From: Thalia democratica
Taxonomy: Eukaryota
Assembly (NCBI GenBank): GCA_965202585.1
Contig: OZ241830.1
Span: 9,982,001 to 10,046,000 of the forward strand
Reading direction: 5' to 3'
Length of the DNA: 64,000 nucleotides
The notes under the pieces are model-generated. The model was given only the letters and a program-made list of their open reading frames with translations, had not been told where the DNA came from and ran no database searches. Both the position numbers and the translations under genes were made by a program. Shown here in pieces: positions 6,521 to 64,000 of the stretch. The number at the start of each line of letters is the position of its first letter. Position 1 is the first letter of the stretch.

Positions 6521-6570
<50 letters not shown>

Positions 6571-9500: not shown

Positions 9501-12500
9501 TTTCTTTTTCAGGTTTTCTTTGTTTTCTTTCGCCCTACACTCGACTACTATCTTGTTCTTGCAGGACTTGTGGCAGTTTATTCCACAAACTTAAAAAAAA
9601 AATTATAACGTTTAATAAACAAAACAAGCTCGTTAAAACGATAAAGTATGCTAGTTTTTTTTGAAACATTAAATTATGTACACTAGAATTGAACAAGTAA
9701 CTAATTAGCTTCAGTTTAGTAAAGCTGTGTACTTTTAGACAGTTTTGAAAAAGAAAAAAAGGTTTTTTAAACACTTGTTAGTAATTTAAAAAGATTTTTA
9801 AAACACATTTTACGTTTCAAAAGCTTTGTTGAGTATAACTATTTTGTGCTATTATTGTTGAAAATTGTTGATTTTATGACAGAGTCTTTGTTAAAAGTAG
9901 CAAAAAGTGAAAAATAATTTTCTAATACATTATACATGATTTACTAGTGATTTGAGTTTATTGTCAAACTACAGTTTCATAATAGAACCATTACCAAATA
10001 TCATCATTTCAAAAAACTTATTGAAATTATTACAATAAACCAAGTTGTAACCGATGATCACTGTTATTAATGCCACTGTGAAACGTTTTTTTTTTACAAA
10101 AACTTAAATCAGTATTATCTTAAATCTTATTGTTACAACTGTGAAACTGTAGTTTTGTAATAAAGATAGATCAGTAATAAATTGTTTTTCTGAATCTCTT
10201 TAACTTTTAGTTGTGCAAAGTTTTACTAGCTTTATTTAAATTATTTTTAAACAACATAAGAACTTAATAGTTATCACATAAAAAAATCGTTTTGTCTGTA
10301 TGGATGTTTTATACCTTCTAACTCAAGCACTGTATTAAAACTATTATACTGATATTCGTTAATAAGATAAAAAGAGTTACAATAAAAAGTAAAGAAAAAA
10401 AGGTATAAAAAAAATTAAAACATTTCTAACCTCGGCACTTCCAGCCCTGCTTTACCAATCCCCAAAGCTGTAAAAAAAATTGAATAAAAATATTTTTCTA
10501 TTTAAAATAATTTTTAATTAATACAACACAATAGTATAATAACAAAAAATATGAATATGGCGATATCAAATTTAACACAATAATAAGAAAAAAACTTGGC
10601 TAAAATAAAATAGAAGGAATGTCATTTAAAATTAAGTTATTTTTTTTTATTCATATAATCTTTTGTTGTTAGTATAACACATTACTACAATAACAAAAAA
10701 TATGAATTTGATGTTTAAACATATATTATAGTAAAAAATATGAATTTAACACAATAAAAAGAAAAAAAAAACTTGACTTTGATTGAATACAAGGGATGCC
10801 ATTTCGAATAAATAAATTCTAAAATGTTTTAAGCTTTTGTTGTTGATATTTAAAAAAAAGTTTTATCTTGCTGTAACTTGATATTGTTGAATATACAAAA
10901 GCATTCTTATAAAAATACTTTGTTGCTAAATATACATTTTATTAATATATCATTACTAAAATCTTAGGTATTTAGATTTATATTGTTATAACTCTATTAA
11001 CAATATGGTTGAAGTTTATCCTTTAAAAAAGAACTAAATGTTTTTTAATAATTTGATACTTAAAAATAGTTTAATTAAAATAGTTAGTCAAGTTTCAAAA
11101 TGATTTTAAGCTAGATTAAGTTTATTTACTTTAATGCTTATTATTTTTGCCTAATAACTTGAAATACAAAAATATATTTATTATTGCAAATTGTACGTTT
11201 TTTATAATTTTAAACTAAAAACTATACATGGTCTTAATTTTTTTGTTAATAAAAGTTTCCTAAGCAAATAGAAAATAGGAAGTATAGCGTTTGTTAATAT
11301 TTAAATACTTAATGTTAAATCAATATAACAAAAAGCTGTTCATTTAATCTGTTTTACCTGCAAAAGTTATTTTAAATTTTAAACTATTATTAATTATGTG
11401 ATATAAACGTTTAAAAATAAGTTAAGCAAAAACAATACAAACGTCTTTAGCTTGTAAAAAGTATATAAAATTGGAAGAAAGTATTTTCGAAGTTTATTTA
11501 ATTTTAGAAATGGAAATAACAATAAAATAAATTTACTAGCAAAACTGGTATGTTTATTTTTAGTAAGGACAACAATATGAAAACAACAATGTTTACATTT
11601 CTAGTTTTTTCCCAATGGACTTTTTTGTCAGCATAAAAAAATTTTAAATGTCAATGTAGTTTCTTACAAAAATTAGATTTAAGAAAAAGTTTATTTATAT
11701 ATAGTATACAAAAATAACTATTTTTCATTTCTTTAAAATTCAAAGTTTTGTTTAAAGAAATTCAGAACATTTAAACTATAAATTTTACACAATTTTAAAA
11801 ATGCGTTAAAAATGTTGTACAAAAACGTGCGTTCTAAACTCTTTAAGTTTAAAAATAACTTTTAATTGAAAATTAATCAGGCGTTTTTATAATACATGTA
11901 TACTTAATTTACATATTTGTTATTGTATTTTACAAAACGTACGCACAAGTCTGCTATTTTTATACTAGCAAATGATAAAAATTTAGTGCATGTTTAAAAA
12001 AACAGTTTCAAAATATATTATAGTTAGTACTTTAACCGGTAACTTTAATAAAACCAAAAAAAAAGTTTGACAAACTTAAAATAAATAATACGTCAGCAAA
12101 AAATTAGATAGATATTTTCTAAAAATTAGAAAACGTCCAAATGTTAAAAGAAGGAATGAGCTTAAATTATATGAAACTTAAAAAAAAAAGCTTAAGTATA
12201 TTATTTTAATTAACTAACCACCTTCCCACACCTGTCACAGAATGTCATATGGAAGTATTAAATAAATAAAAATTAAAGTAAATAAATAAAATAAAACTAT
12301 TAAAATAAGTAATGAACTTACCACTTTTCCACATCTGTCGCAGAACGTAAGGTGGAAGTAGGTGGTTTCCTGAAAATCGTGCTGGAAGTTTCCGAACACG
12401 TCCTGCTTCCGGTTCGATGTCGACGTGATTCGGAGGAAATAATCGAACATCTCACCAGTTGATATGTACCCGTCCCTGTGTGATAATATAATCTTTTAAA

Positions 12501-15500
12501 ATATATGTTTAATTTAAACCAATTGATATGTATCCGTCCCTGTGTATCAGAATAATAAGGAAATATTAGACGTAATGTTTGTAAACAATAACAAGTAACT
12601 AGAAACTGCCTTATATTTCAAATAAAACATTTGAAAAAAAATTCAATTCGGTATTTATTCGTCCCTTAGCAAAAATTTAAAATGAAGAAACCTAGTTCTT
12701 GTCTGATTAAGATATATAGCTGAATACTTTTAAAAACTATTTACGCAGTAAACATGCATAGATCAGTTAAATGTATTAAAAGCAATCGCTATTTTAATTT
12801 AGTTTCAAGGAAAAATTCTTTATAAATAAAAGTTCTGTGTTCAGAATAATATTTTAGTTATAATCGCACTGTACGGATAAAAGCTTGATAGATATCAATA
12901 AAAAAACGCTTTATTCTTTTTATGTTGCTAATAATGTTGCTCGGTAAGTTTCAAATTCTTCAAGTCAATCATATTTTTAGATACGCTAAAAGTCATTTTT
13001 ATTTTACACCGTATCAAATTCTATGACGTCATACTTATATTTTCTATTGTGACGTCACTAACTTGTCAGTGTCGACGGTCTGAAAGTCGTCCAACTCCTG
13101 AAAGTTGTTGGTGAAGGAGGAGAACTCTTCCTCTGAGATCAACCCGTCGCAATCGAGATCGTACGCTTTGAAGACCGACTGTTGGAAAATAATAAAAACT
13201 TAATAAACAAGTGAAACTATAAAAAATTTAATATAATACAAATAAATACATATATAAAATATGCTAAAACGTCATAGTCAAGATCATACGCTTTGAACAC
13301 AGACTGTTGGAAATAAAACATTAAAAAAATAATAAAACTGGATATACTTGTATATTTTATTTATATCCGTCACAATCAATATCTTACGCTTTTAATACGT
13401 ATCAAGTGTTTAGTGATAAAAATTCTAAAAAGAAGCATCAACATTTATTTTTTAGTTTTTTATAACCAAATCAGTATGTTTGATTTGTAAACGAAAAATA
13501 AAGTGTCTTTCAAAAGCAGTTAAGCTTCTAATTTCAAAATACAATAAAATATTAAACTGGAAACAGTATTATGTTTAAGTAATTTTTTATGATATTCATA
13601 CAAAAACAATTTTTTTTGAATATTTTATTTCTTTATGTCAGTAGGTAAAAAATCGTTGTTTAGAATGTGACACAAAAAATTAATAAGCCTAACTAGATTC
13701 TTTTTATAAACAGTTCGTCAACTTATTAGCAATGACTAGTGTGTTTCTCATAGCATGCATAATATTATAACTTTCAATGATATTACAAAAAAGCTATAAA
13801 TTAAACATAACTAATATTTATTTCTCTTTTAAATGATTAATATCGATATTTTCTATTATGACGTATGAATCCTTAGTGATATATCAAACATTAGTGCGTA
13901 AGAATCATATGTACTTTCGGCTATAATTTAAAACCATAACAACGATTAAATTGGTTATTAATTATTATTAAACATTAAAAAACCCAAATTTATACTCTCT
14001 AAGAAAGTATTTACATTATGTAGTTCTTATAGTATAAAAAAAAAAGAAAAAAGAAGTACTGATTGATTTATTTGAAATTTTTATACAGAACTAACATAAA
14101 TTTAGACGTTATTTTCTCTTTCAGTTTATAAATAGCTGATTCGCGACAACCATGAGATTTATTGGGTTCACATGAACTTACTTTAAATTTAACTAGGCTT
14201 TCATTTTCAGTAATGAAATACCGTTAGAAGTTTGAAATATAAACTTAAGCTTTTTTATAATCTAAATTACAGTAATAGCTTTCGTTTAAAAATATTAAAC
14301 AGTTAGTTTGAGAGTATATTTCAAATTAAAATTTATTTCAACTCATGTTTTACTTGAAAACTTATTATCTGAAATTTTTTATGTTATAAAAAAAACTGAG
14401 TATTTTAACATTTTTATAACCCACAACTTACATCGACAATGCTTTATACATGCTGTCTCTTAGCATTAGCTAGTTTTATTTAATTTAATATTAATTAAAG
14501 TAACTAACATCAACAATATTAGACACATGTTGTCTCATAGTGTTTGTGTTTAATTGACAAGTGTATCTGGCGAAATCCGCAAACCCAATGTTTTCAAAAG
14601 ACAACTTGTTACTGGGACTCTGTAATAATACAAACAATTGTTTACTTTTATGACATGACAATAAAGTAATGATGATAATAAAACAACTAAAGAAATCTAA
14701 AATTTTTGAATAGTTGACTAAAACAGTTACTAATCAGTGTAAGTAAAACTTTGTTCATGAGATTATTACTCGCTGTAGCTAAAATATTACATTTATATAT
14801 AAATTTTTGTGCTTAATAGGAAGAAAACTATAGATAGTTTTGAAAGTCTAACACGCTATAATATACAACTATAGTACTTTGATAATTTTCAGTTTCCTTT
14901 AGTTTATGACAATGGCTAATAACTTTATTTTAAATTGTCACTTTTGGTATCTTATGACGTAGGTAAGATAAAAATAAGCTAACTTGAACTTTTAATAAAC
15001 TCTTTATTGCTTGAAGTATAATTTTAACTTATCAATAAACTAATTTAAGTCGCAATAATGCTACCTACAAAATAACTCTTGTTTTCCACAATGGAAGCTT
15101 ATAAAAAGATTAATTTAACCTTAAAAATATTATATTTTTTAACTTTATTTTAATCATGTTTAATCAGCACAGCTTTAAACTTAAATGTGCAAATATTTTA
15201 CGGTAAAAGACAACACTTTTCACAAACTTTAAAAACGTTAGTTCTGCATAAAATAATAACTAGTAGTTAATTTTCTTTTAAAACTATCAGTAATAATTCT
15301 TTTATAAAAAAAAAACATAAAGCAAAACTTTTTTGTGTCTAAATATAAAAAAAAAATTGTAAATTGCTTAAAATATCAAAATCATGCTTAGTTTATAATA
15401 TTTTAATAGCTTTTTTGTTACATACTTAGTTTTCTTATTCAATTTAGCAACAAAACCTTATAAAATTATGAAATACAGCAAAAAGAAAAAAACATACAAC

Positions 15501-18500
15501 ATTTCCATTATTCTGGCTCCTCCTAGGCTCCCTGATCTCAGACAACTTGTAGATCTCGTCTTCAGAGTATTCCAGGTATAATGCTTGCCTGACAGCTGAA
15601 ATCAGGTCAGTGTTGATGTCGAACGGAAACTCAGCTCTTTGCATTTCTATCAGTTCCTGTGTAAATAGAAAAGTAATAAATTTTTTAATGATATCTGTTA
15701 GCTGCATCTATATTAGTTCCTGAAGATGTTTTGTGAAGGTATGAAGTTGAAACTCTAAAATGTGCAAACTTTCTTTTAAAACTAAAAGCTGCTTGTTTAG
15801 TAAGACTTATAACCGTAAAATGTATTACTTTAAAAATAAATTTTAAGTACTTATTTAAAATTCATAAATAAATTTACTTAATACTTATCAAAAGCTTATC
15901 TAAACAAAGCTGATTTAAAAATAAGTAATAGAGCACAAAAAAATAAAGACAATTTTTAACACTACTTATAAAGCTTTCAACTATATCTAGTTTTTTAAAA
16001 CGCTTCATACTTTAAAAATTTTAAAAACTACATTATTATAATCCGTAAATATTTCACTGGTAATGTATAAGCAACTGTTCTTTAAAAATAATTAAATTAT
16101 TTGGTTTGATTTTTAAAAGTTGCAACAAGTACAAACCTCGAGCATACCACTGATCATATAAAGTTTCTTCACATTTAAAAAATCTAAGTATTTAATTATT
16201 TGAAAATAAACGTATTTAGATAAACAAAAACTTTTTAATAAAATGATTAATTTTTTTATTACATACATACCTCGAATATACCACCGATCATGTAGAGTTT
16301 CTTCACATTTATTTTGCTTCCTTCTAATTTATCTGGGTTTGCCGCTTGGACTGCTATAAGGTCTTTCAATACTATCGCTCTGTTTAAACATTTGATTTTG
16401 CAGAAAAATGTTTAATAAAAAGACTTTGTTTTGCTTTGTTTAAATACTTCGACTTTAACACCAACTAAAATAATTTTAAAGTTAAAAGTAAGAATTTATT
16501 TTAACTAGAGTACGTTGGATTCATAGTACGTTTTTTTATTGTTTAAGATTAACAGCTCTATAACATAAAACGTCTTCAACATGTCCGTTTAATAAAATTA
16601 TATAGCTTTATAAACTAAAACCAATCAAAGCATTGTAGTTGTTTAGAGAAACTCATAAATAACAAATTTATATTTACCTTAATTCATATAAGCAGTACTT
16701 TATGTTATAGCACAAAAAATTAAATGTATGTTTGTTTAGTTATTTTACTTAAGTTAGCACTTTTGTTGCTAAATTGAATAAGGAAACTAAATATATAACA
16801 AAAAAAAACTATTAAAAGATTATAAACTAAGGTTGATTTTGCATATTTTAAACACTTTACAAACATTTTTTGTTATATTTTGACACGAAAAAGTTTTGCT
16901 TTATGTTGTTTTTAGAAAAAAAAATAACTTACATGATAGGAACTTTGAACTTAATCAGTAATTTTAGCGTAAGTAAACTCGTTATTATATAACAAAATAC
17001 TTTTTTTCCAACTCTACCACTAACAAACCATATACTTCTATCAACTTTTGTTAGTAATAACTGTAACTTACATGATAGGAACTTTGAATTGATCGGTTAT
17101 TTTAGCGTAGGCTCTTCTGTATTTGCTGTAGTTTGCTTTGGAATCCAACAACTCCACAAACTTTTCCAAAGTCTGAATAAATTAGTATATTGTTTATTGA
17201 ACTTTAAAAAAAGCGTTCAAAAAGTTTGGTCTAAGGACCTGGTGTACGAAAAAACCTTTAGGTTATCAAGTCATACATTACCTACTTAAACAATTACTTA
17301 CGAGCTAAAATTAACAGTTTTTTTTTATAAACTTTTAAACCTAAAAGAAATAGAGCAATCAATAAAATGAACAAAAGAAATAAAAACAGTATCGCGATAT
17401 TATATAATCAAAGTACCTAAAAGCCATTAATAATTATTGGAGCTTGTAAAAAAGGTTTAAGTTATTAACATCATATATCTAAGTTTTTGAGCTCCTTTAA
17501 CTCAAACAAGAATATTTTTGTTTATAGCATTGAAAAGAAAGGTCAGTTATAAGTATCAAAATAATCATATTTTATAACTAGTACAGTAATTTTTGCTTAA
17601 TATTATTTATTTCATTAAACTTTGTTTGACCAATGGTATTTGAACTATATCATACAACACATTTAAATAATTTTTTTACTTTTATAGCCAACACATATTT
17701 ATGTCATAAAAAAGCAGTTTTAAAGCGCTACAAAAAACAAAGTTTTATAGCATTTTTGCTAATATCGCCAATCGTTTTATGGTAGCAGTAAATAGTAATA
17801 CAAAATCATTTATATAAACAGAAATACTATGTTATATTGTATTCTTTTACCTTCATAGCATCTTTGCTGATTACGCTCATCGTTTTATGATAGCAATAAA
17901 TAGTAATATAAAAACAACAACATAAACAGAAATATTATGTTATATTGTATTCTTTTACCTTCATAGCATCTTTGCTGATTACGCTCATCGTTTTATGATA
18001 GCAATAAATAGTAATATAAAAACAACAACATAAACAGAAATATTATGTTATATTGTATTCTTTTACCTTCATAGCATCTTTGCTGATTACGCTCATCGTT
18101 TTATGAAGTCTCGCAATCGCAGTGTGCTCTAGAGCGCCCACTATCGCTCGTAATGTGTTGAAATTATTCATTTCATGCAGTTTCTGCAAAAATAATAATA
18201 ATTAAATCTGTGAATGTAAAGTGTTGAAATTTTTTATTTAACTAAATTTCTGTAGTAAATAAAAAATAAATAAATAGCTCTCGTTAAAAGTTAAAAGTTT
18301 TCGTTTCATGCAGTTTTTGCGAAAATAAAAAGCTAAAATACTAAAAGTAGACATAAATTTTAGATATTTCTTGTGTACTTCTGTGATCTGACTCTTATAA
18401 AGGTAAAAGTTTTTATGTTTTTGTAAAAACTGTTGTAAACAAAATTGTACGTAGTTTTTATGTTTTTATCACATTATTGCTAGTTAAATTTCTATGTAAA

Positions 18501-21500
18501 AGTTCTATAGCGTTACTCATCAAAATAAATGTTTTTTTTTTTTAAATATTGGCCAAAATTAAAATTAAAATTTTTGTTTCATGCATTTTTTAAATTTCGT
18601 CTAGTTTGACACTACTCCAAAACCTGTTTACTTTACTTTGATTTAAAATATCAAATCTACAGGAAATTTGTTAAACCAAGAATATATTTGTAATAATTTA
18701 AACATAGTAATTCATTTTAACTTCTTTAAAACTCTACGTAATTTTTGTAACTTTTCAATTCTTGAATTATCAGAATATTAAACCAAACGAGAAGTTAAAC
18801 GAAACATTTAACAAGTCCCTTTATAAATGTAATTTGTACAATTAATGTAAATAATAGAATATTTAACTACCACATTTATAGTATGAACAAATTTAAACAA
18901 TCTGTAAACTTCTATGACTTTTTGTTGAAAATTGGAAATGAATAATGTTATAGTATTTAGAGATTTAGCGTTATCATTTATGAGACGATATATACAAAAT
19001 TTTATTGAAAAACTTTCATAACTGCTGTGTTACTGGTTTTGAAAACACAAAAGAACATAAAAACAGTGTTGTAAAAAGTATTTACCAAATTAAATTAGTA
19101 AGTATTGTTTCAGTTGTAAAAAATCACAAACAAGCATTTACTGTATTTTGAAAGCGTTACAAATAGAATTTAAAATATTTTAAACTTGTACTGTATTAAT
19201 GTAAAAACATGAAAAACATTAAAAATACAAGAAAAATCACATAGATGATCAATGAACTATTGTCGAAAAAAATTTGTTTAACAGCATAAGTTTTGACAAT
19301 TAAGTTGATTCTAAATAAATAACAGAACAACAAATTGACATGTTGTTTTTGATAAATAAAGTTTCTGAAACTTAAACGGTTTAAGTGCTAATAAATTTTC
19401 TTATTCTTTTAAAGCTGACTGATTGATCAGAAATTTAACAAATATACTATAGCATTAAGTTTCTAAAGTTTTGTAATTTTAACTTTGATATGACTTGGAA
19501 TTTTTAATTTCAAAGAATTGCAGAAACTAAATATAAAAACAGTAATATTTGATATTTTTGTTTAAAATCCAAAAACAAATTACGAAATTCAATACTCATT
19601 TCAATAATAAAGATAAATTACATCTACGCAATTAGATAACTTTGTTCGGTATTTATCAAAAAATGCCTTTATTTTTCGTAATAATTAATAAAAAGTTTAA
19701 GTTCAAAATTTTTTTAAATTTATCTTTAAAGGAAAACAATACAAATAATGTGAAGTAGTTTGTTAAGAAAATATTTTGACATTGTCTAAATAAAAAAAAA
19801 ATTATCCAACTAAACTTTTAAGTGTTTACATTTTTAATCGAAATAAAAACTATTGTGAATGTTGTTGAACTAATTATGTTTTCCATATTTTTGTTATAAT
19901 TTGTTGTATGCAAACATAAAAAGCATGTAAAAACAAGCTTCAAACAATACAATTCTGAATGTAACAAAGTTAAGTCTCTATAAAAAAAAAATTGTGCATA
20001 GATACTTTTTACAAAAGCTCTCTTGACAAAAAAAAAATACACAATTGCTTTAACATTCTGTAACATATGAATTGTATATCTTTTCGTGCAATAAAATGTT
20101 TTATATTCCTACAGTTGTGAATTTATACAAAAATACCCAAAAGTAGTTTTTGAAATATTTCATTACAAAGTCAAGTTAATTAGGTAACACAAATTTTTTA
20201 ACTAACAACATAATGATATTTATACATTCAAAAGAAAGAGAAAATTTGAAACACGTACTCATAGATATAAATTTAAATAAGTATAAATCATCACTACTTC
20301 AAACTTAATTACTTGAATTAATATTTATGAACATTCTCTATGAATAAAATATTCGAATCAGACTTTCAGTGAACTTACGTAATTTTTTAGTTTAAACAAG
20401 TTGTGATTCACTAAAATTAACATATCGATTTTTAATTCCAGCTTGTAATTAAATCTAACTCGTTTATGAAACTAAATTAATAATTTATGAACTCTCATGT
20501 AGTTAGATGAATTAGCTGGCAAACTTTCTTTAATTGTTGCAACTCGCTTACGTAACTTTAAACTTGAACTTGTTAATTTTTTTAACTGATTTTTACTTGA
20601 TATAAACCATGCGAAAAGTTATAAGAAAATAAAAAAAAAATTATGAGAATTAAAAAATAATAGTGTTTTACTACTTTGTAAAAACTATAATATTATAATT
20701 TATAATATTTTAAGAGTAAATTATCTGAATACAAAAGTCAATAATTACTATATTTTTCTTTGAAAATTTTCTTTTTATATTTTTAGGTAAGTAAAATAAG
20801 CATATGTAAGGTTATCAAAAATATTTTTAAACTGATATAAACCATACTTATAATTGCATAAAGCTTTAAAACTAAAAGATTGTATTTTAAAATTAAGTTT
20901 ATAACAAAGCAAATTCAAAATTTTATTCTTAATCAAAAATTACTCTGATAAAAAGGGAACAAACTTAATTGTTGCATAACTTGGTTAATTTTAAAAATAG
21001 AAACATTAACATACAAGCTCTAACTTTAAACAAAACTTAATTACAAATTAGTGCTTTAGTTGAACTTGTTTAAAAATGTTAAAGCAGTTAATCTTATACT
21101 CAGAAGTATAACATAATAATTTTACGTAAAAGCTAGGTTTAAAGATGAAATAAAGTTATTTGAACTTATAATCACATTATCTTTTCAAGTTTAATAGTAT
21201 ATTTAAGTATACTTTATTATCAAAATACTTTCAAAAGCATTTACTTCTTATTTTTATTTTTGCTTGGAAAAAGCTTAATCAAAACTGTTGATTTATAAAG
21301 TTTAAACTACAACAAAAACATTAAATAAAAATATACTAGTAATTGTCTATAAAGATAGAGTGAGTTTTTTACAGCTTTAAAGCGTAACATAATAGAAGTA
21401 GTTTTTGAATGATGAATTAGCCCTTTATACAAAGGTATTAGATTATTTTTGAGTAAAACTTGTTTAAAACTTTGATATTTATTAAGTTAAAATAAACTAG

Positions 21501-24500
21501 AATCTTATTTTAACAAAAATGTTAATGCTATCGGTTTTATAACTTCTTTCCTTTCTATGAAATTCTATTCAAAAAAATTCTCAAAACGCTGGAAAATTTT
21601 AATCATCTAATTCAAGTAATGTTTTTCTCTTTGATCTTAATTTCTTTATTATTTAACGTATTGTTTCGATATGCCTTTTTTAAACGTTTAAGTATCGTTT
21701 TTCATGCAATAAGTCTTTTAACACTTTAAACAAGATGCTTACACATTTTCGCTTATAACAAATCGATCTAGCATGGAAAGGTGTTTCTAGTTCAATAGAC
21801 GTAATACGCAATTGACACCTTAGGAAAATTTTCAAAAACTGCTATACTAGAACTAGTTATACTAAAGTATTTTGCAAAAGCAAATAATTAGTTTCAAATG
21901 CCCTCTAAAATCTTTGTATACTTCAATAGCTCAGTCGCTAGAAATTTTCAAAAACCACTAATTACCAGTAGTTTAACACTGCTTATTTTATAAAACTTTT
22001 TATTAACCTATTAAGAATATGTATGTTATAACGATTATTGATTAACTGCCCGCGGAAGAATTTGCTATCAATAGCTAGAGAACATTTATTCAAAAAAATA
22101 TATCAAAACTACGTCATTTGCACGCGTGACTAACCTCGGCAATCTGCAGAAACTTTGCTATTGCAGCGGCTCTTTCGGCTGCAGAGTGGTTCTCCAGTAT
22201 CATGCACTGCACCCAGTGGGTTATGTTGTTGCACAGGACGACCGCTCTCTCCAGCTTGCGGATCCCTTTGATGGATCCCCTCTTCAGATACTCCAGGTAG
22301 TCCGCCACCTGAGAAAACAAGTTGGAAAATTATTTTTCGAGAATCAATATTTTCTTGGAATTGATGTTAAATTGAATTTGTGTCAAATGGAACAAGCGGT
22401 GGTTACGTAGTTTTGGTTTATAGCGTTAAAACTACTGAAACGTTTTATCATTGTTAATATTTTTTAGCTTAATTTGGTTGTAAAAAGAGTTTGCTGTTAT
22501 AAACAAAAGTTCTGATATCAAGCAGATTGCTAGCTACAAGTTTACTTGCTTTGCAACTAGTTTCACTGCTTTAAATCTGAGTAGTAAAAAAAATTGTGAA
22601 ACTTTTAAAGAGCTATATGGTTTAACTTTGAAGTATTAAGTGAACAGATCAAAATTTTAAACAGTTTTATTTTATGTAGTAGAAAGTTAAAAGGTGTTTA
22701 ATTATTAATGTTGATAAATTTGAAATAAACTTAAAATTTATGTAGTCTAAAGCATGTTAAAATGGTAAAACTGAAACTTATTCGGACTAAAACAGTTTTG
22801 ATTGACTATTTAAGTGCAACTTTTGGTTCATTTATTCCACACTTAGTCTTAAAATCATTTCTTTATCATAAATACTGTAGCTTGTTTTAGTGAATTATAT
22901 CTTATAAAATACAGAAATTTATTTAATTCTAGTTATATTTAGCTTTAAATCGTTTAACTGAACAACTTATGTTGTAGAAAGATTAATATTCAATATTTTA
23001 AATGATTTCGAAAACCTTACAAACAAAACTAATTTTTTTCAAATCATTAATGCACAGTAAAATAAGAATTCTGTAAAACAAAAGTTTAAAAGCGATTGGA
23101 TGTTTAGTTGTTTACATTTATAACCCCAATGGACTTAAATTGGAAATCATTATGTAAGTATTGAAGGTTACGTAAGAAAATATGAATAATTAATCTGCTA
23201 AAGTTCTAAATATATAAACTTTTGGTTTTGATATAAAACATTACCTTTTCTGCTAAAAAAAATTTTGACTAGAACTAAAATTTAAAAGTTTTTTGAAAAT
23301 AAGTTTCACATACTTTAAATAAACACAAGAAAACTATAATCATTTTAAAACTACTTTTTACAGCATATTAGCTTTATTGACAATACGATAAAGTTAAAAA
23401 CTTGGAATACATAAGATTAAAAGAATTTTATATCAAGTTAAATTGGTACTTATGGTAGCTAGCATAATTTCTTTAAACATATTTTTTATATGAACATACA
23501 AGCATGCATTAATACTTATTTCAATAAAATTAACTAGCAGATAATCCTCTAAATAATTTATACTTTAAATAACTTGTTAATATATTTAGTTTTATACTAT
23601 CTAACAGACAATTTTCTGAAACATTAACTCATGTGAATTGCTAGTTTATAAAGTTGTTTTTTTATTTAGATGATTTAATACAAATGAATAATAACGAAAT
23701 GAGTTTATGAATTTATCATTGTATTCCATACTACTTAAATATTTATATGTATGTATCTCTGTAACTACATATTTAACTAACAGACTGCCTTCGGAAAGAC
23801 TTGTACTCCATACTACTTTAATATTTATACATGAAACTCTGTAACTACATATTTAACTAACAGACAATCTTCTGAAGCACTTGTACTCCATGTAGCTGAT
23901 GTGAATCGCCAGCTCATGCGGTTTCAGGTGATTGAACACCAGCGAGTATTTCCTCAGTTTCTTGTTGACGTCTGTCGGTCTTTTTGATATCTGGCACCTC
24001 TGAATTATTCCGAAGTTGCATCTTAAAAGTTTAGTTTGTTGAGTTAGAGATGTTTTGAGTTATGGTTATTTTTTCAATTTTATTAAGTTTTTTTTTTACT
24101 GTTAATTAATAAAATATATAAATATTTTTATTATTAAACGTGAAATATGTTAGTTTTTTTCGATAAATTACGCTAAAAATATTTAACAAAGTAGTATAGT
24201 TGGTGTTGAAAAAACTTTTTTTTTTGTCTTAAGTCAAGCAAAAAGTTTAAGAAAGTTTCTAATCAACTTAAAAAAAAGTGAGCAGTGATTAAAAAAGATA
24301 AAACAAATAAAAATGAATATATATTTCAAAGTCAAGAAAAAAAAATTAATATAAATAAACTCAAGTAGAAAAATGTTAAGCTGTATTGATATACAATAAA
24401 AATTAAATCTTATTTTACGAATGTCAGAAAAATAAGTATTTAATTTTGAAAAATAAAAACTACATAAACCTTTTTATTAGCCGTTTTGTACTAGGTTCAT

Positions 24501-45929: not shown

Positions 45930-46770
45930 AATCTACAGCCAGTAGATCATTATGTTTATTATGCAAACATGTCGTTTAGAAAGATAAACCAACTATTAAC
46001 CAACAATCTAACTTTCTGTTAAAATTTTCTAAACTATACCTTCAATAAAAAAAGAGCATTCCTGTCTAAAATAAAACAAAATCTTAAACTTTTTAAACAT
46101 AAAAAAAAGACACTGAATTAAATTATTTAAATGTAAAACCAGTAGATATGGCTACATTAGTAATTGATTACCAAAGAAAAGTATAGCAATTAAACACAAT
46201 TAACAACAATCTAACCTTTTAATAAAGTTTAGTCAAAAACTTTAGCATTTTATTTATATATAAAAAACTTCAAACATAGTTACTGAAGTAAAACTAAATT
46301 ATTAACAACTACAACCAGTAGCTTAAGATGTTTACTGTGTACACAACACAGTAAACAACAAGTAATTGATTGATCAAAAAAGATATAGCAACTAACTATA
46401 TGGTATCTAAACAATCCAAAATTGTAATAAATTTATTTAAACTACATTACTCAAAAAGAATTTAAGCATTCTTGCCTATAACTAAACAAAAACTTCAAAC
46501 ATGAAGACTAATTTTTAATTAAGTTATTAAAAACTACAACCAGTAGCCTAAGATGTTTACTGTGTACACAAGTAATTGACTGCTCAAGAAAGATATATCA
46601 ATTATAATGGTATCTACAAGATCAAATCTTGTAATGAATTTATTTAAACTACATCTTTTGATAAAAAAATTAAGCATTCTTGCCTTTAACTAAACAAAAA
46701 ACTTCAAACTGAATTAAAACAAAATTATTAACAACTACAACCAGTAGCATGTTTGCTGTGTACACAACAC
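45930..46770. repeat. degenerate ~200-nt tandem array (5 units)
   Basis: CTACAACCAGTAG-like anchor at ~45933, 46135, 46309, 46534 and 46735, followed by ATGTTTACTGTGTACACAA in the best-preserved units. Confidence 0.8.
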
Positions 46771-49009
46771 GCTACGTATCAAAACACTACAAGCTAGCAA
46801 GATATTCATACGAGAAAAAATATCGATTTTTTACATTTTGCTGACATCAAGCCTTCAAATTCGACGCTCAATTAGCAGAGTAATGGGACAACTTTGCTGT
46901 TTCCTACACACAAAAAGTTCAAGTTCAAGTGGCTCTAATGTGTGTTAAATTTACACAAAAAACCGACATAAAAAGTAATGAAGGTTTTCTTTAAAATGTT
47001 AAAAGCTTAAAAAAGTACTTTTGATGAAGTTTTATGTGTAAACCGTAAACACAAAAGACACTTTTAAAGTATCTAAAAGGTAACAAAAGTGCATAAAAGT
47101 TTTTTATAATGTGTTGAAGTTATTGTCACAATCTAATTGTAATGTTTATATCAGCGTAACAGTAAAAAGTAAAAGCTGAAAAACGTTGCTTGATGAAATT
47201 TAGCGTGAAAAAGTTAAACAAAGGAAAACCTTTAAAAAAACGAAAAATACTACAGTTCTTTAAGTAAAAGAAGTTAAAGCATTTTTATTATACTTTAGGA
47301 CTGAATAATTTGAATGAAGCACTTAACTTGAAAGTTAAAGAAATATTTTAATCTAAATTAAATGACTGTCAACAAAGACTATTTCAAAAGTTATTCTTTG
47401 TTTTAGCTTAAGAATTTTTACACAGCTAGAGTAACTTAATTAAGTATTGGAATTGAAAAAAGCTTCTAAAATAGTTAAGTAGGAAAACTTATTAACTTAA
47501 AATGCTATTACTGCTGCTCCAAAAATGTACTGAAGTCTCTTTGATAATTTAAATTTTTAGACGTCTTAAAAATTGTTTAAATTTGCTAAAACATTTCTAA
47601 AAAGTCTATAAAAACTTAAAGTAAATTTTTGTGAAATATATATCAATATTTGTTGTGGTTTTTTTTCTCAATATACGTATGAATGGAAATAAAAAAGGTT
47701 ATAAATCACAAAATTTTAGTTTTGTATAAAGTTTGTTCTCAATTCTTTATAGAGAGATCGCTAGCTGAAGTTAATTGATGTACCCAAAAAAGGGTAAAAA
47801 ATTTCTTTATTGAAAGTTTTTGATAAAGTTAATTGTCATTAAATAGTTTTTAATCACTTAAGAATACATTTAAAATAAACTTTAAAGAGAATTAATGTAC
47901 CTAAGTAAGAATAAAGTATTTTAGCTGAAAGTTTTTGGTTAAAACAAATTGGTCTGGATTTTTTTGAAATACTCCAATCTATTTAAAACTGACTTTCAAG
48001 GACCAAGTAAACTTACTTGAATTCAAAGTTCTTTTTTAAGTGAAAGTTTGCAATAAATACTTGAAAATTTTCAGAAACAAATGTGCGTGAGTGTGCGTAC
48101 ATATAAGTGAAAGTTATTTATCAAACGCTTCAGTTTCACTTATTTAACTTTTGAACAGCAACATAGCACGTATTAATCAGTGAACTTTGATACAAATAAA
48201 AATTTGCTACAAGTTTCGATTAAGTTTGTTTACATTAGACAATAAAGTAAATCTTGCTGCACTAACAGTCAAAACTACAAAAAAAAACAATTACTGCAAT
48301 GCATTCCAAAGTTATATATATTAAAGGTTTTTTTTTTCATTGATTAGTAAATAAGGTTTTTAAAAGGAAATAGTAATAGTAGCACAATAACTTCAACATT
48401 TATTTATAAATACTGTCAAAAATATTTTAGATTGTAAATGTATGTTTTAGTTTAAGATTCTCTTAACAATAAATACTAAAGTTATTTAAATGAATTTAAA
48501 TTCTAAATGATGTGTTAGTTTCTTTAAAAGTTTTTAATGAATTGCGATAACAACGATTATTTCAGAACAATTTTACTGCTGTAACATATTTGAATACTTG
48601 ACAAAAACAAAAAAAATCAAGAACGAAATGCTTATATCTTTTTATAAACTTAAATAAACTGAAAATGAAGTTGTTACAAAAAGTACATTTAGATCTTGAC
48701 TTACTGAAATTTATGAACTGAACTACTAAGAAACAAAGCCCCAAAGTAATTAAAAGTAAACTAAAGTTAACCTTACTACAGTATCTTTAGTTTCTAAATA
48801 AACAGTACATAACAATAAAAAATTTTGACTATAAATGACACTTAATTCAATTTACCATAATCAAATACCTTTAAGATAAAGTTGTTTAAAACCAATAATA
48901 AAACAGCTTTGCTGAGCTAGAGGAAAAATAATTTCATATAAAAATGATGCGAAAACGCAAAACTGCACAAAAATTTACTCAAAATTAAATGTGCTGATCG
49001 AAAATCTCA

Positions 49010-54119: not shown

Positions 54120-55299
54120 GGGAGCGGGTCACTTTTGCACGAGCGTCACTTTTGCACGAAGACACTTTTGCACGAGGGGACACTTTTGCTCGAGCGTCAC
54201 TTTTGCACGAAGGGTCACTTTTGCACGAGGGGGAACTTTTGCACGGCGACTGTTTTGCACGAGGGTCACTTTTGCACGAGGGAACACTTTTGCACGGCGA
54301 CTCTTTTGCACGGAGGGTCACTTTTGCGCGAGGTGACACTTTTGCACGGCGACTCTTTTGCACGGCGACATTTTTTCACAATGACAATTTTTTACGGCAG
54401 CATTGTTGCACAACTTCACATTTTTACGATGAAATTTTTGCCCAGCGACATTTTGGCACGATGAGTTTTTTGCACAGAAAATAAATGTTTCATGCAAGCC
54501 GATTAAAAGTATATTAGCTACTACCAAATCTGTAACATAAAAAGAAACTGAAAACTAAAATTTTATAATATACTTTAAACATTTTCATAAACTAATTAAA
54601 AAATGTAGTTAATTTTATTAAAAATATTTAAAATAAACCTTTTTAAAAGTACTTGATTTAAGCCTAATAAAACTTTTTAGCACTAACTATAAATTAGCTA
54701 AATGTTCTGAATTTTTTTTATTCACATTTCAAAAACAGTTGTAATACTCAACAAAAACTAAAATACTTGCATAAGTTTTTAGAAACTCACATTAAGCTTT
54801 GAAAGTTTTTACTCGGGAAAAAACTCTTGTTTCAAATGACGAAAATTATTTTTTTTTATAAAAGGTTCATACCAGGGACAAAAAAGCTAATTTGTTTAGA
54901 AACTAGGATAAAAATTACTAAAAGTGTTAGTAAGTTGTTCTAGTTTCTTTTGCTTCAACAACTATGCCTTTTTATATATTTTACTATACGGTTACAAGTT
55001 TATTGTTTATATGATGAACCTAGGCATCAAAACCTAGACCACTTAAATTGGAAGACACATCAAAAAAAAATAAAATAACACATATAGTTTATTTATTATA
55101 AGAAAGATAAAAACATAATTTGATATAAAATATATAGGTCAACAAAAAAAGCAAAGTCTTAACCACAAACTTAAATTTATTTAGGCTTTGATGTAGAATG
55201 ATCAACATTGTGCAAAAGTGACCCTCCGTGCAAAAGAGTCGCCGTGCAAAAATGTCCCCTCGTGCAAAAGTGACGCTCGTGCAAAAGTGACACCCACCC
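54120..55299. mobile_element. non-autonomous Mutator-like (MULE) element with TIRs built of tandem TTTTGCACG units
   Basis: left end GGGAGCGGGTCACTTTTGCACGAGCGTCAC; right end reverse complement GGGTGGGTGTCACTTTTGCACGAGCGTCAC; exact 9-bp TSD GACAAAAAT (54111-54119 and 55300-55308). Confidence 0.85.
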
Positions 55300-60366: not shown

Positions 60367-60506
60367 TCAGTCATAGTAACGGTTGCCACGCGACCTGTAC
60401 GTATGGGCAACAGGGTGCTTTTGTTTGAGGGGTAATAAGGGGTAGTTGAAATGTTTCCTGCTTCTTATGCAGGTCAGCATAAGTTCAGTGTATGTTAGGT
60501 TGTTTC
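60367..60506 (-). CDS. plakin terminal exon (GNNLTYTELMLTC...RYYD*)
   Basis: ttccaacag acceptor, phase 1, TGA at 60369-60367; absent from the ORF track. Confidence 0.88.
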
Positions 60507-62793
60507 CTGTTGGAAAAACTATCAGCTATTTTCAGTTAAGCTGAACATTGTACGAAAACCATTAAAGGTTGTAAAAATAGTTTGAAAAATTTTTACTTTT
60601 CAAATAATTAAAATAAAATTAATATAATATAAATCTTGCTCTTAGCATTATAGTACTAAATATAACTTTTTTTTCATCAATAAATTTACATATTAGATGT
60701 AGATAACATACAGAATATTAATTACTTTTAACGTAGTTGTAGCACTAAATCAAATTTAAGTCAAGTACTTATAACAACTAACGGTATTTTTTAACGGTAT
60801 AAATTTTAGTTGTTCCAATAATATATTTGACTTTAACCCAACCTGAATTTGGGTCATAGTATCCTTTCAATCCCATATCGTTCCTCTTATTGGTCAATAT
60901 TTCAGCCAATCGCTGATCTAATAATTTTCTCTCTAGCGCCACCGAGGGTGGAATCCTGTACCCGGCCACGGGGTCGATAAGCCCCCCTGTTGCCAACTGG
61001 GCGTCCAGCAACCGGATACCGTGGATCTCTATGACAACCCCTTTTCTGTGATTTTTAATTTATAATAGTTTTAATGATTTAGTATTTAAGCTGTATATTT
61101 GATAGATATTCAGTGGTTTGTACTATAACTGTATCAAAACACTCAACTAAATTATAAGTTTAGGTAAAAAAGTATGAAGGCTTTGTAGGTGAACACTCAA
61201 TCATTGTTTTAATTTTAGTAAAAATATGTTAAAATATTTTTTAGTTGGTTTTAGATCAATCCAACTTTTTTTTAGGTCATGTCACAGTTTAATTAATTAG
61301 CTAACGAAAAATTTTTAATTTAAGTATAAAGTACTTTTCAAGTAAATTATTGCATTGTCTTTTTTACTGAAATAGAGTTAAAAACATAACTTCATCATAT
61401 ATTAAGTATGCATATATACAAATATATGTATATTTAAAATTAATAAGAAAAAATGTACTTACTTTAGTTTTCTAAATAAGTTTTTATTAAAGCAAATACA
61501 TAAGAAAATCATTTAACTTTGAAAATTACAGACCTATATACCTTTTAAAGTTTATTGCTTGTTTATTTTATAATTTATAGAGAAACTATTAAGCTTTTTT
61601 TCTCAACACAAATTATATTTCTCATGCAAACGTTTCGCAGTGTATATAGGTAAATCAGTATTTTAATAGTTCAAAACGTGATTTACTCTGAACATGATTT
61701 CTACTTTTAAGTCAACTAGCTTCAAAATTTTACAAGTTTATAGGAAACTGCTAACATGAAAATGTTTCTCGTTTTTCAAGCTCTAAAAGTTGTTATATTA
61801 GAAGTAATTTAAAGCTCTTAATTTAGAAAGTAGTTCAGCCGAAAAAAACATTAAAATATCGATTATTATTTAGTTTTTATGTTAAGACAACATACAAATA
61901 CTTTTTTAGATAGCTTTAATATATTTAAACAACAATGTTTAACTTTTATAAACATTATATCAAAAATACTTAGTTTACTTAAACTTAATTAAGCTAAAGT
62001 TTTAAATTTATTTTAGATAGAAAATGTAAGATTAATCTCTAATGTTTAACAAAATTTTTGTAAACTTTTATATATCACTTAGTTTGTCTTTAAAAGGTTT
62101 CAACATAAGCATAATTGTTTTTCATCTTGGTTCGCTTTAAAATTTCTCTGTTGTATTTTAGCGTAATCAACCATAATTGATTTACCAATTGTCATAATTT
62201 ATTGATTTGATCAAAAATTTAAACCTGCTAGCTTCATATAAGGTTGATACCTTTCCACTTATAATATTCAGGTATACAGTACATATATATTTAAACAAAA
62301 AAAGCTATTACATGCCTGATGATAGCTTCATACAAGGATATTGTCTTTTACTAATGTGGTATTCAGATATATTGTATTGTAAAAGTATACATAACTAATA
62401 CATACATTATAGCTTCGTACAGGGATATTGTTTTATTCAGATATACTGTATAGTAAATATATACATAACTAATACATACCTTATAGCTTCGTACAGGGAT
62501 ATTGTTTTATTCAGATATACTGTATAGTAAATGTATACATAACTAATACTTACATTATAGCTTCGTACAGAGATATTGTCTTTCCACTTATGGTATCCAG
62601 ATATAACAAACATAAAACAAAATACACCTAGTAATTTATCATTCTTACCTGATAGCTTCATACAGTGATATCGTCTTCCCACTAATAGTATCCAAGTACC
62701 CACTAACTGCTTGTTCTGCTCTTTGGAGAGGAAGAACAAACTGTGGTAAGATGAGTCCTTCTTTGCTGGCTCTCTTTACAGACATCTTCTTTC
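60367..62793 (-). CDS. plakin-family gene (plectin/desmoplakin/epiplakin-like), last three exons encoding a plectin-repeat domain; 5' part lies beyond the window
   Basis: Spliced GKKMSVKRASKEGLI...AEQAVSGYLDTISGKTISLYEAIRKGVVIEIHGIRLLDAQLATGGLIDPVAGYRIP...KGYYDPNSGNNLTYTELMLTC...YPLLPL matches the plectin-repeat-domain pattern (HGIRLLEAQIATGG.IDP, KGFFDPNT.ENLTY). Confidence 0.93.
60843..61045 (-). CDS. plakin exon (KGVVIEIHGIRLLDAQ...YYDPNS)
   Basis: tcacag / GTTGGG, phase 2/1. Confidence 0.92.
62225..62603 (-). repeat. five intronic copies of the plakin exon 3' end plus donor site
   Basis: copies at 62554-62603, 62480-62517, 62406-62443, ~62317-62370 and 62225-62274 translate to YLDTISGKTISLYEAI-like peptides followed by a donor-like GT (GC in the ~62317 copy). 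Confidence 0.92.
62649..62793 (-). CDS. plakin exon (GKKMSV...SLYEAIR)
   Basis: ttaccag / GTAAGA, phase 1/2. Confidence 0.88.
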
Positions 62794-64000
62794 CTGGTAA
62801 GATTATATGTGGGTCAGCTATATAAAGTCTTACTTTGATGATATTGAAAATAGCTGTTTTAATACGATGACAATATTAGTTGCTTGCTCTATTTAATATC
62901 ATATTTTCATCCAAATAATACCAATAGGGAGCTTATATTTTAGAAATTAGAGAAAATGTGCACTTTGTCAAAGCTAGCTGTTAAAGTTAAAAAAAGCTTT
63001 TTTTATAACTTTACTCCTAGGTAGTGAAAAAAAATATTTCTAAATATAACCTTACTTATACAGATACGTTTAGTTTATATAGTGACGTAAAAATGTATAA
63101 ATAATTGCCAAAAATTGTTTAAAAAGTCTAAATGAGTCAAGCATAAGGGCAAAAATGATGAAAACTATAACATATTTAGTATGTTTCCATTAAAAACCCA
63201 GTTGAAGTATTTGATTCGTTAACAAATAGAAAAATATGTTGATACAATAAAGGAAGATTACTGTATAATTTGTTTTTATGAAAGCTATAACAACTATGAT
63301 TGTAAATTGTTTCGCAGTGTATAAGTTCTTGCAGTAATAGTGGTATAAAATGCAGTAAGATAAATACAAAACAATATTTTTCTTGCAAGATAATATTGAG
63401 CTATCGCAAAAGTTTCACACATAATGTAAACTAGTTACACTTAAAAACTAGAATAAATGATCGTTATCAACACATCATCGTTGATATTTGCGTAAAAGTT
63501 CATATTTTTAGAACATGTGAGCATCAGATAAAATCATGCTTTATTTTCTACTAAAATAAATCAGTAAAATAGTTTATTTTTAGAGTTTGGTACATTTTAC
63601 TAATTTGTAATTTCTTAAAACATTAAGAATAAAGGTTAATTTAGGCTAAAACTGTATATATGAATGTATAAATATATTGATAAAATATTTTCCACTTTAT
63701 ACTCTCTAAACTAAAGAAAAAAAAAAGTTGTAACCTCATGTAGAAAAAAGTTTAGATTTTAGCAAAAAGTTTGTTTCATTTCAAACAATTTATATTTTTG
63801 AGATAGACCGATATAGAAATAGTATTATTATTTCAAACTTATTTCAAAAACTTATTTTCATACTTATAAAAAACTTTATAATAACATATTTTACAAAATT
63901 TATACTACACAAAAAAATATGGATTGGAAGAAAAGTTTCAAATTTTGATAACTTCACAATTTATTATTTTGGTAGCACTAGGTTAAACAAGTTTGTATAA

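What the first reader, a model, noticed from the sequence alone, without database searches (positions are those of the whole stretch)
62225..62698. Plakin echo ladder: nearest copy has 16/16 identical amino acids but 9 synonymous changes
Exon (62649-62698): TAC TTG GAT ACT ATT AGT GGG AAG ACG ATA TCA CTG TAT GAA GCT ATC AG|GTAAGA. Echo 95 nt downstream (62554-62603): TAT CTG GAT ACC ATA AGT GGA AAG ACA ATA TCT CTG TAC GAA GCT ATA AT|GTAAGT. Both read YLDTISGKTISLYEAI, including a first-position Leu swap (TTG/CTG). The intron sequence after the two donors is unrelated beyond GTAAG. Further copies use other synonyms (Ser TCA/TCT/TCC; Leu CTG/TTG/TTA). The farthest (62225-62274) is still indel-free and reads YLNIISGKVSTLYEASR|GT. 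No AG precedes the nearest echo, so it is not an ordinary alternative exon. Nine of nine synonymous at p~0.4 is about 3e-4.
Basis: seen in the sequence. Interest (0 to 1): 0.85.

Follow-up and report, generated by a model that had tools for sequence, protein, structure and literature searches.

The report
Exon-end copies repeated inside an intron
The last 50 bases of a plakin-repeat exon plus its splice donor are repeated six times down the following intron; the striking "silent-only" differences arise because the nearest copy carries codons still found in other living versions of the same exon, not because the copy itself is protected as coding sequence.

Summary
On the minus strand, exon E1 (62793-62649, plectin repeat) ends in a 50-nt segment. 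That segment recurs with a donor-like GT five more times in the intron (62603-62225). Rung 2 encodes the same 16 residues with 9 silent changes; the 17th, split codon differs.

The implied constraint on the echo is not supported. Reads show four versions of this exon: two in this organism, both expressed, and two in a related organism. They differ at 22 sites, all silent. Seven of the nine echo codons occur in one of those versions. The echo is 4 changes from a relative's exon end and 10 from its own neighbour. Older rungs carry the same states, so the window's exon is the derived copy.

In the second version the echo has Lys>Met, Leu>Pro and a weakened donor. Rung number varies from 3 to 6. 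RNA contigs splice only from the authentic donor.

This is a junction-spanning minisatellite with silent pseudo-donors, like human F7 intron 7, probably kept exon-like by exchange between versions.

Eight of twelve local direct repeats in this window sit on splice junctions. First-stage notes elsewhere in this genome describe the same thing, and that bias is unexplained.

The parts
62649..62793 (-). Exon E1 of a plakin-family gene. It encodes ...GKKMSVKRASKEGLILPQFVLPLQRAEQAVSGYLDTISGKTISLYEAIR, with the Arg codon split across the junction.
   Evidence: Pfam PF00681 Plectin repeat, 21 bits, cut-off 20.5. The RNA contig joint 61045->62649 has GT..AG ends on the minus strand. The upstream exon is seen as a loose end at 62796.
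62649..62698 (-). Rung U1: the exonic first unit of the ladder, with the authentic donor GT at 62648-62647.
   Evidence: This is the only donor seen joined to E2 in RNA contigs.
62604..62648 (-). Spacer S1 (45 nt), the start of the intron. An in-frame TAA follows directly after AG|G.
   Evidence: It is nearly identical between the two versions of this organism: no listed substitution and one 1-nt deletion at 62619.
62554..62603 (-). Rung U2: the nearest echo. It encodes the same 16 residues with 9 silent changes and has pseudo-donor AT|GTAAGT.
   Evidence: It is present in both versions of organism A and in organism B.
62406..62553 (-). Spacer S2, rung U3, spacer S3 and rung U4. These are young 74-nt units with an in-frame 12-nt deletion and GTATGT pseudo-donors.
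   Evidence: TRF period 74, 93% identity; alignment. They are absent from the second version and from organism B (joints 62302->62512 and 62304->62543).
62275..62405 (-). Spacer S4, rung U5 and spacer S5. U5 is decayed, with indels, a stop, and GC instead of GT.
62225..62274 (-). Rung U6: the farthest and oldest echo. It has no indels, reads YLNIISGKVSTLYEAS, and is followed by GTTTAA.
   Evidence: Aligned in organism B contigs (62214-62344).
60843..61045 (-). Exon E2, the next plakin-repeat exon and the splice partner of E1.
   Evidence: Pfam PF00681, 55.4 bits. RNA joints 61045->62649 and 60505/6->60842/3.

Best explanation
The ladder is a degenerate minisatellite whose first unit spans the exon-intron junction. 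The ancestral unit was about 95 nt: 50 nt of exon end, the donor, and about 45 nt of intron. Only the first, authentic donor is used. The downstream copies are intronic pseudo-donor units with no coding role.

The 'silent-only' difference between the exon and the nearest rung is inherited rather than maintained. The real exon exists in several deeply diverged versions, either alleles or paralogues. Purifying selection lets these differ only at silent sites. The rung carries codons drawn from that pool. The likely reason is that rung and exon end keep exchanging sequence, by unequal crossing-over or gene conversion within the array and between versions. The window's own exon copy has meanwhile acquired a cluster of four private silent changes.

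What is shown:
- the array and the splice usage;
- the four exon versions, and that all their differences are silent;
- that 7 of 9 echo states occur in other exon versions;
- non-silent decay of the echo in the second version;
- variation in rung number.

What is inferred: exchange (conversion or unequal crossover) as the process that keeps the nearest rung exon-like.
For: 1. Structure. There are six head-to-tail units, the first of them exonic.

2. Splicing. In run X3, exon-only coverage is joined 61045->62649 with GT..AG ends, for both exon versions. No joint from any rung donor is listed; one joint row was not shown. Reading through the authentic donor meets TAA at once.

3. Exon versions. 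Four are seen: A_ref; A_alt (DNA depth about 50 against about 30, with both present in RNA at 173 and 205); B13; and B14. They differ at 22 sites, all silent, and give the same 47-residue peptide.

4. Echo codons.
- In U2, the states CTG, ACC, ATA, GGA, ACA, TAC and ATA each occur in another exon version.
- U2 is 4 differences from the B13 exon end, 6 from A_alt and 10 from its own neighbour.
- Changes private to the echo are TAT, TCT and AG>AT, that is 2 silent and 1 non-silent. This fits neutrality.

5. Ancestral states. Older rungs U3-U6 carry CTG, GGA, ACA and TCC. The window's TTG, GGG, ACG and TCA are therefore derived. All four lie within 62666-62695.

6. Decay in the second version. 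The A_alt echo has AAG>ATG (62581), CTG>CCG (62599), four further unlisted changes at its 3' end, and GTATTT instead of GTAAGT.

7. Shared states. TAC/TAT, ACT/ACC and ATT/ATA each occur in both the exon and the echo across versions. This is the pattern expected from exchange.

8. Rung number differs: 6 in the window, about 3-4 in A_alt, 4 in B13 (one extra 95-nt unit, 'goes back 95') and 3 in B14.
Against: - The exchange itself is not observed. With only four short-contig versions, independent mutation plus sorting of old variation cannot be fully excluded.
- The 3' half of U2 in organism B (62557-62587) was not listed by the read tool, so its state there is unknown.
- No sampled exon version matches U2 exactly.
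- I could not decide whether the two versions in organism A are alleles or paralogues. The depth ratio is about 3:5, not 1:1, and organism B shows a similar ratio.
- Logan contigs drop rare variants, so rare use of pseudo-donors is not excluded.
- This account does not explain why such arrays sit on splice junctions so often in this window.
Confidence: 0.75

Rival explanations
1. The echo was different from birth. A single unequal exchange between two already diverged versions (homologues) placed the other version's exon end and intron start behind this version's exon. The silent differences are therefore allelic differences frozen at the moment of duplication, and no later conversion is needed.
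For: U2 is much closer to other exon versions than to its neighbour. The versions are very diverged: a 1009-nt version-specific contig at 61243-62251 implies it shares no 31-mer with the other version.
Against: The rung is present in both versions of organism A and in both contigs of organism B, so it predates their separation. All four versions have an S1-like intron start, and none has an S2-like one. S2 is therefore not a sampled version's true intron start. States shared between exon and echo across versions point to repeated exchange.
Confidence: 0.12
2. The nearest echo is under purifying selection because it is used. It would act as an alternative exon end or donor, or as a store of alternative codons that is switched into the exon.
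For: Nine of nine differences inside the 16 codons are silent (P about 1e-4 under a neutral echo). The GTAAGT pseudo-donor is intact. The deletions in U3 and U4 are in frame.
Against: No RNA joint from any rung donor is listed. There is no acceptor. Any transcript skipping the authentic donor meets TAA immediately. In the second version the echo has Lys>Met, Leu>Pro and a weakened donor. Once the right exon version is used as comparator, the echo's private changes are 2 silent and 1 non-silent.
Confidence: 0.04
3. The rungs are selected as extra U1 snRNP binding sites (decoy donors). They would protect a very A+T-rich intron from premature cleavage and polyadenylation, or aid recognition of the true donor. 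The exonic part is only a passenger.
For: Donor-like GT sites are retained in U2-U4 and U6. Several other arrays in the window also repeat donor regions. One of them carries only 7 exonic bases (6288-6702). The intron is about 75% A+T.
Against: Acceptor-side echoes also occur (12.5 kb, 13.3 kb, 18.3 kb), and this idea does not explain them. Rung number varies freely from 3 to 6. The donor of the second version's U2 has decayed. No functional test was made.
Confidence: 0.06
4. The ladder is an assembly artefact: a haplotype mis-join or false tandem duplication in a heterozygous genome.
For: The genome clearly holds two diverged versions of this locus. Echo codons resemble the other version.
Against: Read-derived contigs reproduce 62503-62649 (U3 start, S2, U2, S1, exon end) with 0 differences. 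The second version has its own U2-S1-exon contig. Organism B contigs also carry the rungs. The best DNA runs may be the assembly's own sample, but they are de Bruijn contigs of reads, and organism B is independent.
Confidence: 0.02

Closest known systems
Human F7 intron 7 (IVS7) 37-bp VNTR, whose first element spans the exon 7-IVS7 boundary (Borensztajn et al. 2006, PMC1557585, read)
   Same: It is a minisatellite whose first unit contains the exon end and the authentic donor. That donor is therefore followed by repeated 5' pseudo-sites that normally stay silent, and the most upstream site is selected. Copy number is variable. All of these features are seen here.
   Different: Here the units are longer (74-95 nt) and much more diverged. 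They carry 38-54 nt of coding sequence, so codon-level comparison is possible. The array is shared with a related organism. Splice-site choice was not tested experimentally here.
Internal tandem duplications spanning splice signals, with intronisation of one copy: Rogers-type intron gain (Hellsten et al. 2011, PMC3265369; Lehmann et al. 2010, PMC2891723)
   Same: A tandem duplication that includes exonic sequence and a splice site leaves the mRNA unchanged, because one copy is spliced out as intron.
   Different: No new intron was created here. The intron already existed and the copies lie inside it, downstream of the donor. The geometry expected for intron birth, where the intron ends are copies of both flanking exon edges, is not present.
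Concerted evolution between a gene and a neighbouring non-functional copy (gene / pseudogene conversion; general knowledge)
   Same: A constrained copy and a nearby unconstrained copy share polymorphic states. Only silent variants persist in the constrained copy, while the unconstrained copy also shows non-silent ones.
   Different: The scale is tiny: 50 nt, 95 nt apart, inside one intron. Conversion tracts were not demonstrated directly.
Tandem exon duplication giving mutually exclusive exons (Kondrashov and Koonin 2001; Letunic et al. 2002; from memory)
   Same: Unannotated copies of an exon's coding sequence lie in the adjacent intron.
   Different: Only the exon's 3' end is copied. There is no acceptor, inclusion would not keep the frame, and there is no RNA support.

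Membership tests
Plakin (plectin) repeat coding exon | Sequence matches the plectin repeat profile | tested here: met
   PF00681: E1 scores 21 bits (cut-off 20.5) and E2 scores 55.4 bits.
Plakin (plectin) repeat coding exon | Spliced into mRNA at canonical sites | tested here: met
   In run X3, exon-only coverage is joined 61045->62649 with GT..AG ends on the minus strand. E1 and E2 read through in frame.
Junction-spanning minisatellite with 5' pseudo-sites (F7 IVS7 type) | Head-to-tail units, with the first unit containing the exon end and the authentic donor | tested here: met
   Six units with periods 95/86/74/74/95. TRF score 391.
Junction-spanning minisatellite with 5' pseudo-sites (F7 IVS7 type) | Downstream units carry donor-like sites that stay silent, and the most upstream donor is used | tested here: inconclusive
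   GTAAGT, GTATGT x2 and GTTTAA are retained. Only the authentic donor is seen in RNA contigs, but contigs cannot exclude rare use.
Junction-spanning minisatellite with 5' pseudo-sites (F7 IVS7 type) | Unit number is polymorphic | tested here: met
   Joints 62302->62512 (second version), 62304->62543, and 'goes back 95' (organism B).
Functional alternative 5' splice sites or alternative exon end | Use of the alternative site gives an open reading frame and is seen in RNA | tested here: not met
   TAA follows directly after the authentic junction. No rung-donor joints are listed.
Tandem exon duplication / mutually exclusive exons | The copy has both an acceptor and a donor and preserves the frame | tested here: not met
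   There is no AG within about 20 nt upstream of U2. The nearest AG (62627-62626) gives a 72-nt insert read out of frame with a stop (own reading).
Intron birth by tandem duplication (Rogers model) | The intron's two ends are copies of the flanking exon edges created by one duplication of an AGGT-containing exon segment | tested here: not met
   The echoes of the upstream exon end lie at the 5' side of a 1.6-kb intron. No copy of E2's start was found there.
Concerted evolution by gene conversion or unequal crossover | The same variable states are shared between the paralogous units across versions, with mosaic tracts | tested here: inconclusive
   TAC/TAT, ACT/ACC and ATT/ATA occur in both exon and echo. 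S1 has no listed substitution between versions (one 1-nt deletion), while U1 differs at 5 of 50 bases. Four private changes cluster at 62666-62695. There are too few versions for a formal test.
Assembly false duplication | Reads do not support the duplicated arrangement | tested here: not met
   Read-derived contigs from both versions and from organism B contain the rungs.

The most novel reading that the evidence does not exclude
The ladder is one instance of a genome-wide process in this organism. That process preferentially places tandem copies of splice-junction segments (exon edge plus splice site) next to exons, on both the donor and the acceptor side. These copies keep exchanging sequence with the exon across deeply diverged versions. 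Intronic rungs would then act as a reservoir that both records ancestral codons and feeds silent variation back into coding sequence.

In this window, 8 of 12 local direct-repeat loci sit on splice junctions. Across six exon/echo pairs I hand-counted 21 silent against 9 non-silent codon differences.
Probability: 0.25. Interest if true: 0.75.

Novelty: new member of a known kind. Interest (0 to 1): 0.42.

Why it matters
For this locus the result is mostly a correction. A pattern that looks like protein-level selection on intronic DNA disappears once the echo is compared with the other living versions of the exon. That is a useful warning for every 'silently recoded echo' noted in this genome.

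Two things remain of wider interest. First, the old rungs act as a small fossil record that polarises silent changes in the exon. Second, tandem arrays in this window start at splice junctions far more often than their share of the sequence predicts. If that holds genome-wide, it points to an unrecognised mutational or selective bias at exon edges in a genome with very diverged haplotypes or paralogues.

Tried and rejected
- A paralogous copy of E1 or E2 inside the window as the source of the echo codons: blastn and tblastn found none.
- Fetching other copies by exact protein look-up of the 46-residue exon ORF: not on record.
- Assembly mis-join: rejected by read-derived contigs.
- Tiny-intron reading of the 34-36-nt GT...AG spacers: the frame breaks and a stop appears (own reading).
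- A cassette exon from the AG at 62627-62626: out of frame with a stop.
- Literature search for a described genome-wide exon-edge echo phenomenon: nothing found in the held library. Only single-locus precedents turned up.
- Alleles versus paralogues could not be decided. The depth ratio is about 3:5 in organism A and similar in organism B. The four versions relate in a star-like way, with no clear orthologous pairs.
- Short exon peptides can only retrieve fragments, and the full protein cannot be referenced from this window.

Full report
**1. What is there**

The gene runs on the minus strand. Exon E1 (62793-62649) and exon E2 (61045-60843) each match the plectin repeat profile PF00681, at 21 and 55.4 bits. 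Joined, they read through in frame as ...SGYLDTISGKTISLYEAIR|KGVVIEIHGIRLLDAQLATGGLIDP....

The last 50 nt of E1, together with the donor and the start of the intron, form the first unit of a head-to-tail array of six units:

| Rung | Coordinates | Reading and following bases |
|---|---|---|
| U1 | 62698-62649 | YLDTISGKTISLYEAI, then AG\|GTAAGA |
| U2 | 62603-62554 | same 16 residues, then AT\|GTAAGT |
| U3 | 62517-62480 | in-frame 12-nt deletion, GTATGT |
| U4 | 62443-62406 | in-frame 12-nt deletion, GTATGT |
| U5 | 62369-62316 | indels, a stop, GCATGT |
| U6 | 62274-62225 | YLNIISGKVSTLYEAS, then GTTTAA |

TRF reports the youngest part as period 74 x 3.0 at 93% identity. The spacers are related only weakly, through shared ends and indels.

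**2.

U1 and U2 differ at nine positions within the 16 codons, and all nine are silent. For these codons, 23% of random substitutions are silent. With a constrained exon and a neutral echo, 37% of differences should be silent. That gives P = 1.4e-4 for 9 of 9, or 9e-4 for at least 9 of 10. The pattern is therefore real and needs an explanation. It was, however, picked out of many echoes noted in this genome.

**3. RNA**

Run X3 covers exons only. It contains contigs that join 61045 to 62649 with GT..AG ends on the minus strand, at depth 205. A second contig, at depth 173, makes the same join for a variant version of both exons. No joint from any rung donor to E2 is listed. Intronic coverage is a few percent of exon depth and runs unspliced through the junction. 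If the authentic donor were skipped, the frame would meet TAA immediately (AG|G TAA). The rungs therefore behave as silent pseudo-donors. Contigs cannot exclude rare use.

**4. Other versions of the exon**

DNA runs X1 and X2 (organism A) hold the window's version (contig depth about 30, 0 differences). They also hold a second version (depth about 50) with nine differences between 62651 and 62729. Organism B (run X4) has two further versions, here called B13 and B14.

I mapped every listed variant to its codon. There are 22 variable sites and all are silent. One Leu codon changes CTC>TTG through two changes. All four versions give the same 47 residues. The exon is under strong purifying selection, and its versions are deeply diverged at silent sites, about 6% of all exon positions between the two versions of organism A.

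**5. Where the echo's codons come from**

| U1/U2 difference | Status of the U2 state |
|---|---|
| CTG, GGA, ACA | found in all three other exon versions |
| ATA (codon 16) | found in A_alt and B14 |
| ACC, ATA (codon 5), TAC (codon 13) | found in B13 |
| TAT (codon 1), TCT (codon 11) | private to the echo |

Over 50 nt, U2 is 4 differences from the B13 exon end, 6 from A_alt and 10 from its own neighbour.

The older rungs U3-U6 carry CTG, GGA, ACA and TCC. These are therefore the ancestral states, and the window's TTG, GGG, ACG and TCA are derived. All four are private to this version and lie within 30 nt (62666-62695).

Measured against the pool of exon versions, the echo's own changes are two silent and one non-silent (AG>AT). 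That is what neutrality predicts.

**6. The echo is not protected**

In the second version of organism A, U2 carries:
- AAG>ATG (62581) and CTG>CCG (62599);
- two silent changes that match exon states (TAC, ATT);
- four further changes at its 3' end that the tool did not list;
- GTATTT in place of GTAAGT (loose end at 62551).

**7. The array is dynamic**

- The second version lacks about 209 nt (joint 62302->62512).
- B14 lacks about 238 nt (joint 62304->62543).
- B13 has an extra 95-nt unit between U1 and U2 ('goes back 95'), and its next unit runs into U5/S5-like sequence.
- Rung number is thus 6, about 3-4, 4 and 3.
- U3 and U4 look like a recent expansion in the window's lineage.
- The likely ancestral ladder had three rungs of period 95.

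Three further patterns fit repeated unequal crossover or gene conversion within the array and between versions:
- States such as TAC/TAT, ACT/ACC and ATT/ATA occur in both exon and echo across versions.
- S1 shows no listed substitution between the two versions of organism A (only a 1-nt deletion), while the adjoining U1 differs at 5 of 50 bases.
- The window's private changes are clustered.

This step is inferred, not observed.

**8. Not an artefact**

A read-derived contig reproduces 62503-62649 exactly. The second version has its own contig through U2, S1 and the exon end. Organism B carries the rungs too. No second copy of E1 or E2 exists in the window.

**9. Comparison with the known**

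The closest precedent is the 37-bp VNTR of human F7 intron 7. Its first element spans the exon 7-intron boundary, so the authentic donor is followed by silent 5' pseudo-sites and the most upstream site is chosen (PMC1557585).

Tandem duplications that include splice signals and are then spliced out are also known from work on intron gain (PMC3265369, PMC2891723). Here, though, no intron was created.

I file the ladder as a new member of that kind. The codon-level 'fossil record' and the exchange with diverged exon versions are additions.

**10. What remains odd**

An unbiased self-comparison of the window found 12 loci of local direct repeats with offsets of 30-600 nt. Eight sit on splice junctions. 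One is the plakin ladder. Six are on exons of a RasGEF/EF-hand gene (Pfam), at the 12.5, 13.2-13.3, 16.1-16.3, 16.9-17.1, 17.7-18.6 and 23.7-23.9 kb loci. One is a donor array at 6288-6702 that contains only 7 exonic bases.

Both donor-side and acceptor-side copies occur. Across six exon/echo pairs in the window I hand-counted 21 silent and 9 non-silent codon differences.

First-stage notes describe the same thing elsewhere in this genome. Those notes are unchecked leads.

Exchange with diverged exon versions could explain the silent bias in general. It does not by itself explain why arrays start at junctions. I found no paper describing such a genome-wide pattern in the held library.

**11. 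Limits**

- Variants within about 30 nt of contig ends are not listed, so the 3' half of U2 in organism B is unknown.
- Alleles versus paralogues is undecided. The depth ratio is about 3:5 in both organisms, and the four versions relate in a star-like way.

Noticed in passing
window 12454-12545, 13145-13336, 16130-16311, 16909-17109, 17744-18591, 23719-23891 (minus strand): A second gene (RasGEF and EF-hand exons, RasGRP-like) has exon-edge copies at nearly every exon I looked at.
- Acceptor-side echoes lie near 12.5 kb, 13.3 kb and 18.3 kb.
- Donor-side echoes or arrays lie near 16.1 kb and 16.9 kb, at 17747-18106 (period 108 x 3.3, 94% overall, adjacent copies near-identical) and at 23719-23891 (period 80).
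- The 13.3-kb echo differs from its exon by 5 silent and 1 non-silent codon.
   Followed up: partly
window 6288-6702 (minus strand): An array of period about 109 starts exactly at a donor (CATTTCAG|GTATGTCCTCCTCAT...). It repeats only about 7 exonic bases plus the intron start, so the repeated object is the splice junction rather than coding sequence.
   Followed up: partly
whole window: Eight of 12 local direct-repeat loci (offset 30-600 nt) sit on splice junctions, far above the share of sequence near junctions. No exon annotation was available for a formal test.
   Followed up: partly
window 62666-62695: The window's exon version has four private silent changes (TCA, ACG, GGG, TTG) packed into 30 nt. 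It has none in the other 95 nt of the exon or in the 45-nt spacer S1. This looks like a conversion tract from an unsampled source. None of the window's own rungs carries these states at the corresponding positions.
   Followed up: partly
window 60400-63000: Version-specific read contigs sit at about 30 and about 50 depth in organism A, and at about 51 and about 79 in organism B. Both ratios are roughly 3:5, not the 1:1 expected for two alleles of a diploid or for two fixed paralogues. A 1009-nt contig (61243-62251) is specific to the window's version, so the other version shares no 31-mer there.
   Followed up: no
window 54126-54476, 55210-55295, 8624-8680: There are G+C-richer satellite-like arrays of a 17-18-nt unit (GTGCAAAAGTGAC...) on both strands. 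They are unrelated to the ladder.
   Followed up: no
window 46002-46770: An array of four copies with period about 200 (73% identity) has units containing gtgtacacag|(c/t)aaacat. The first copy abuts a G+C-richer patch at about 46740-46900. It may be another exon-edge array, but I could not place an exon.
   Followed up: no
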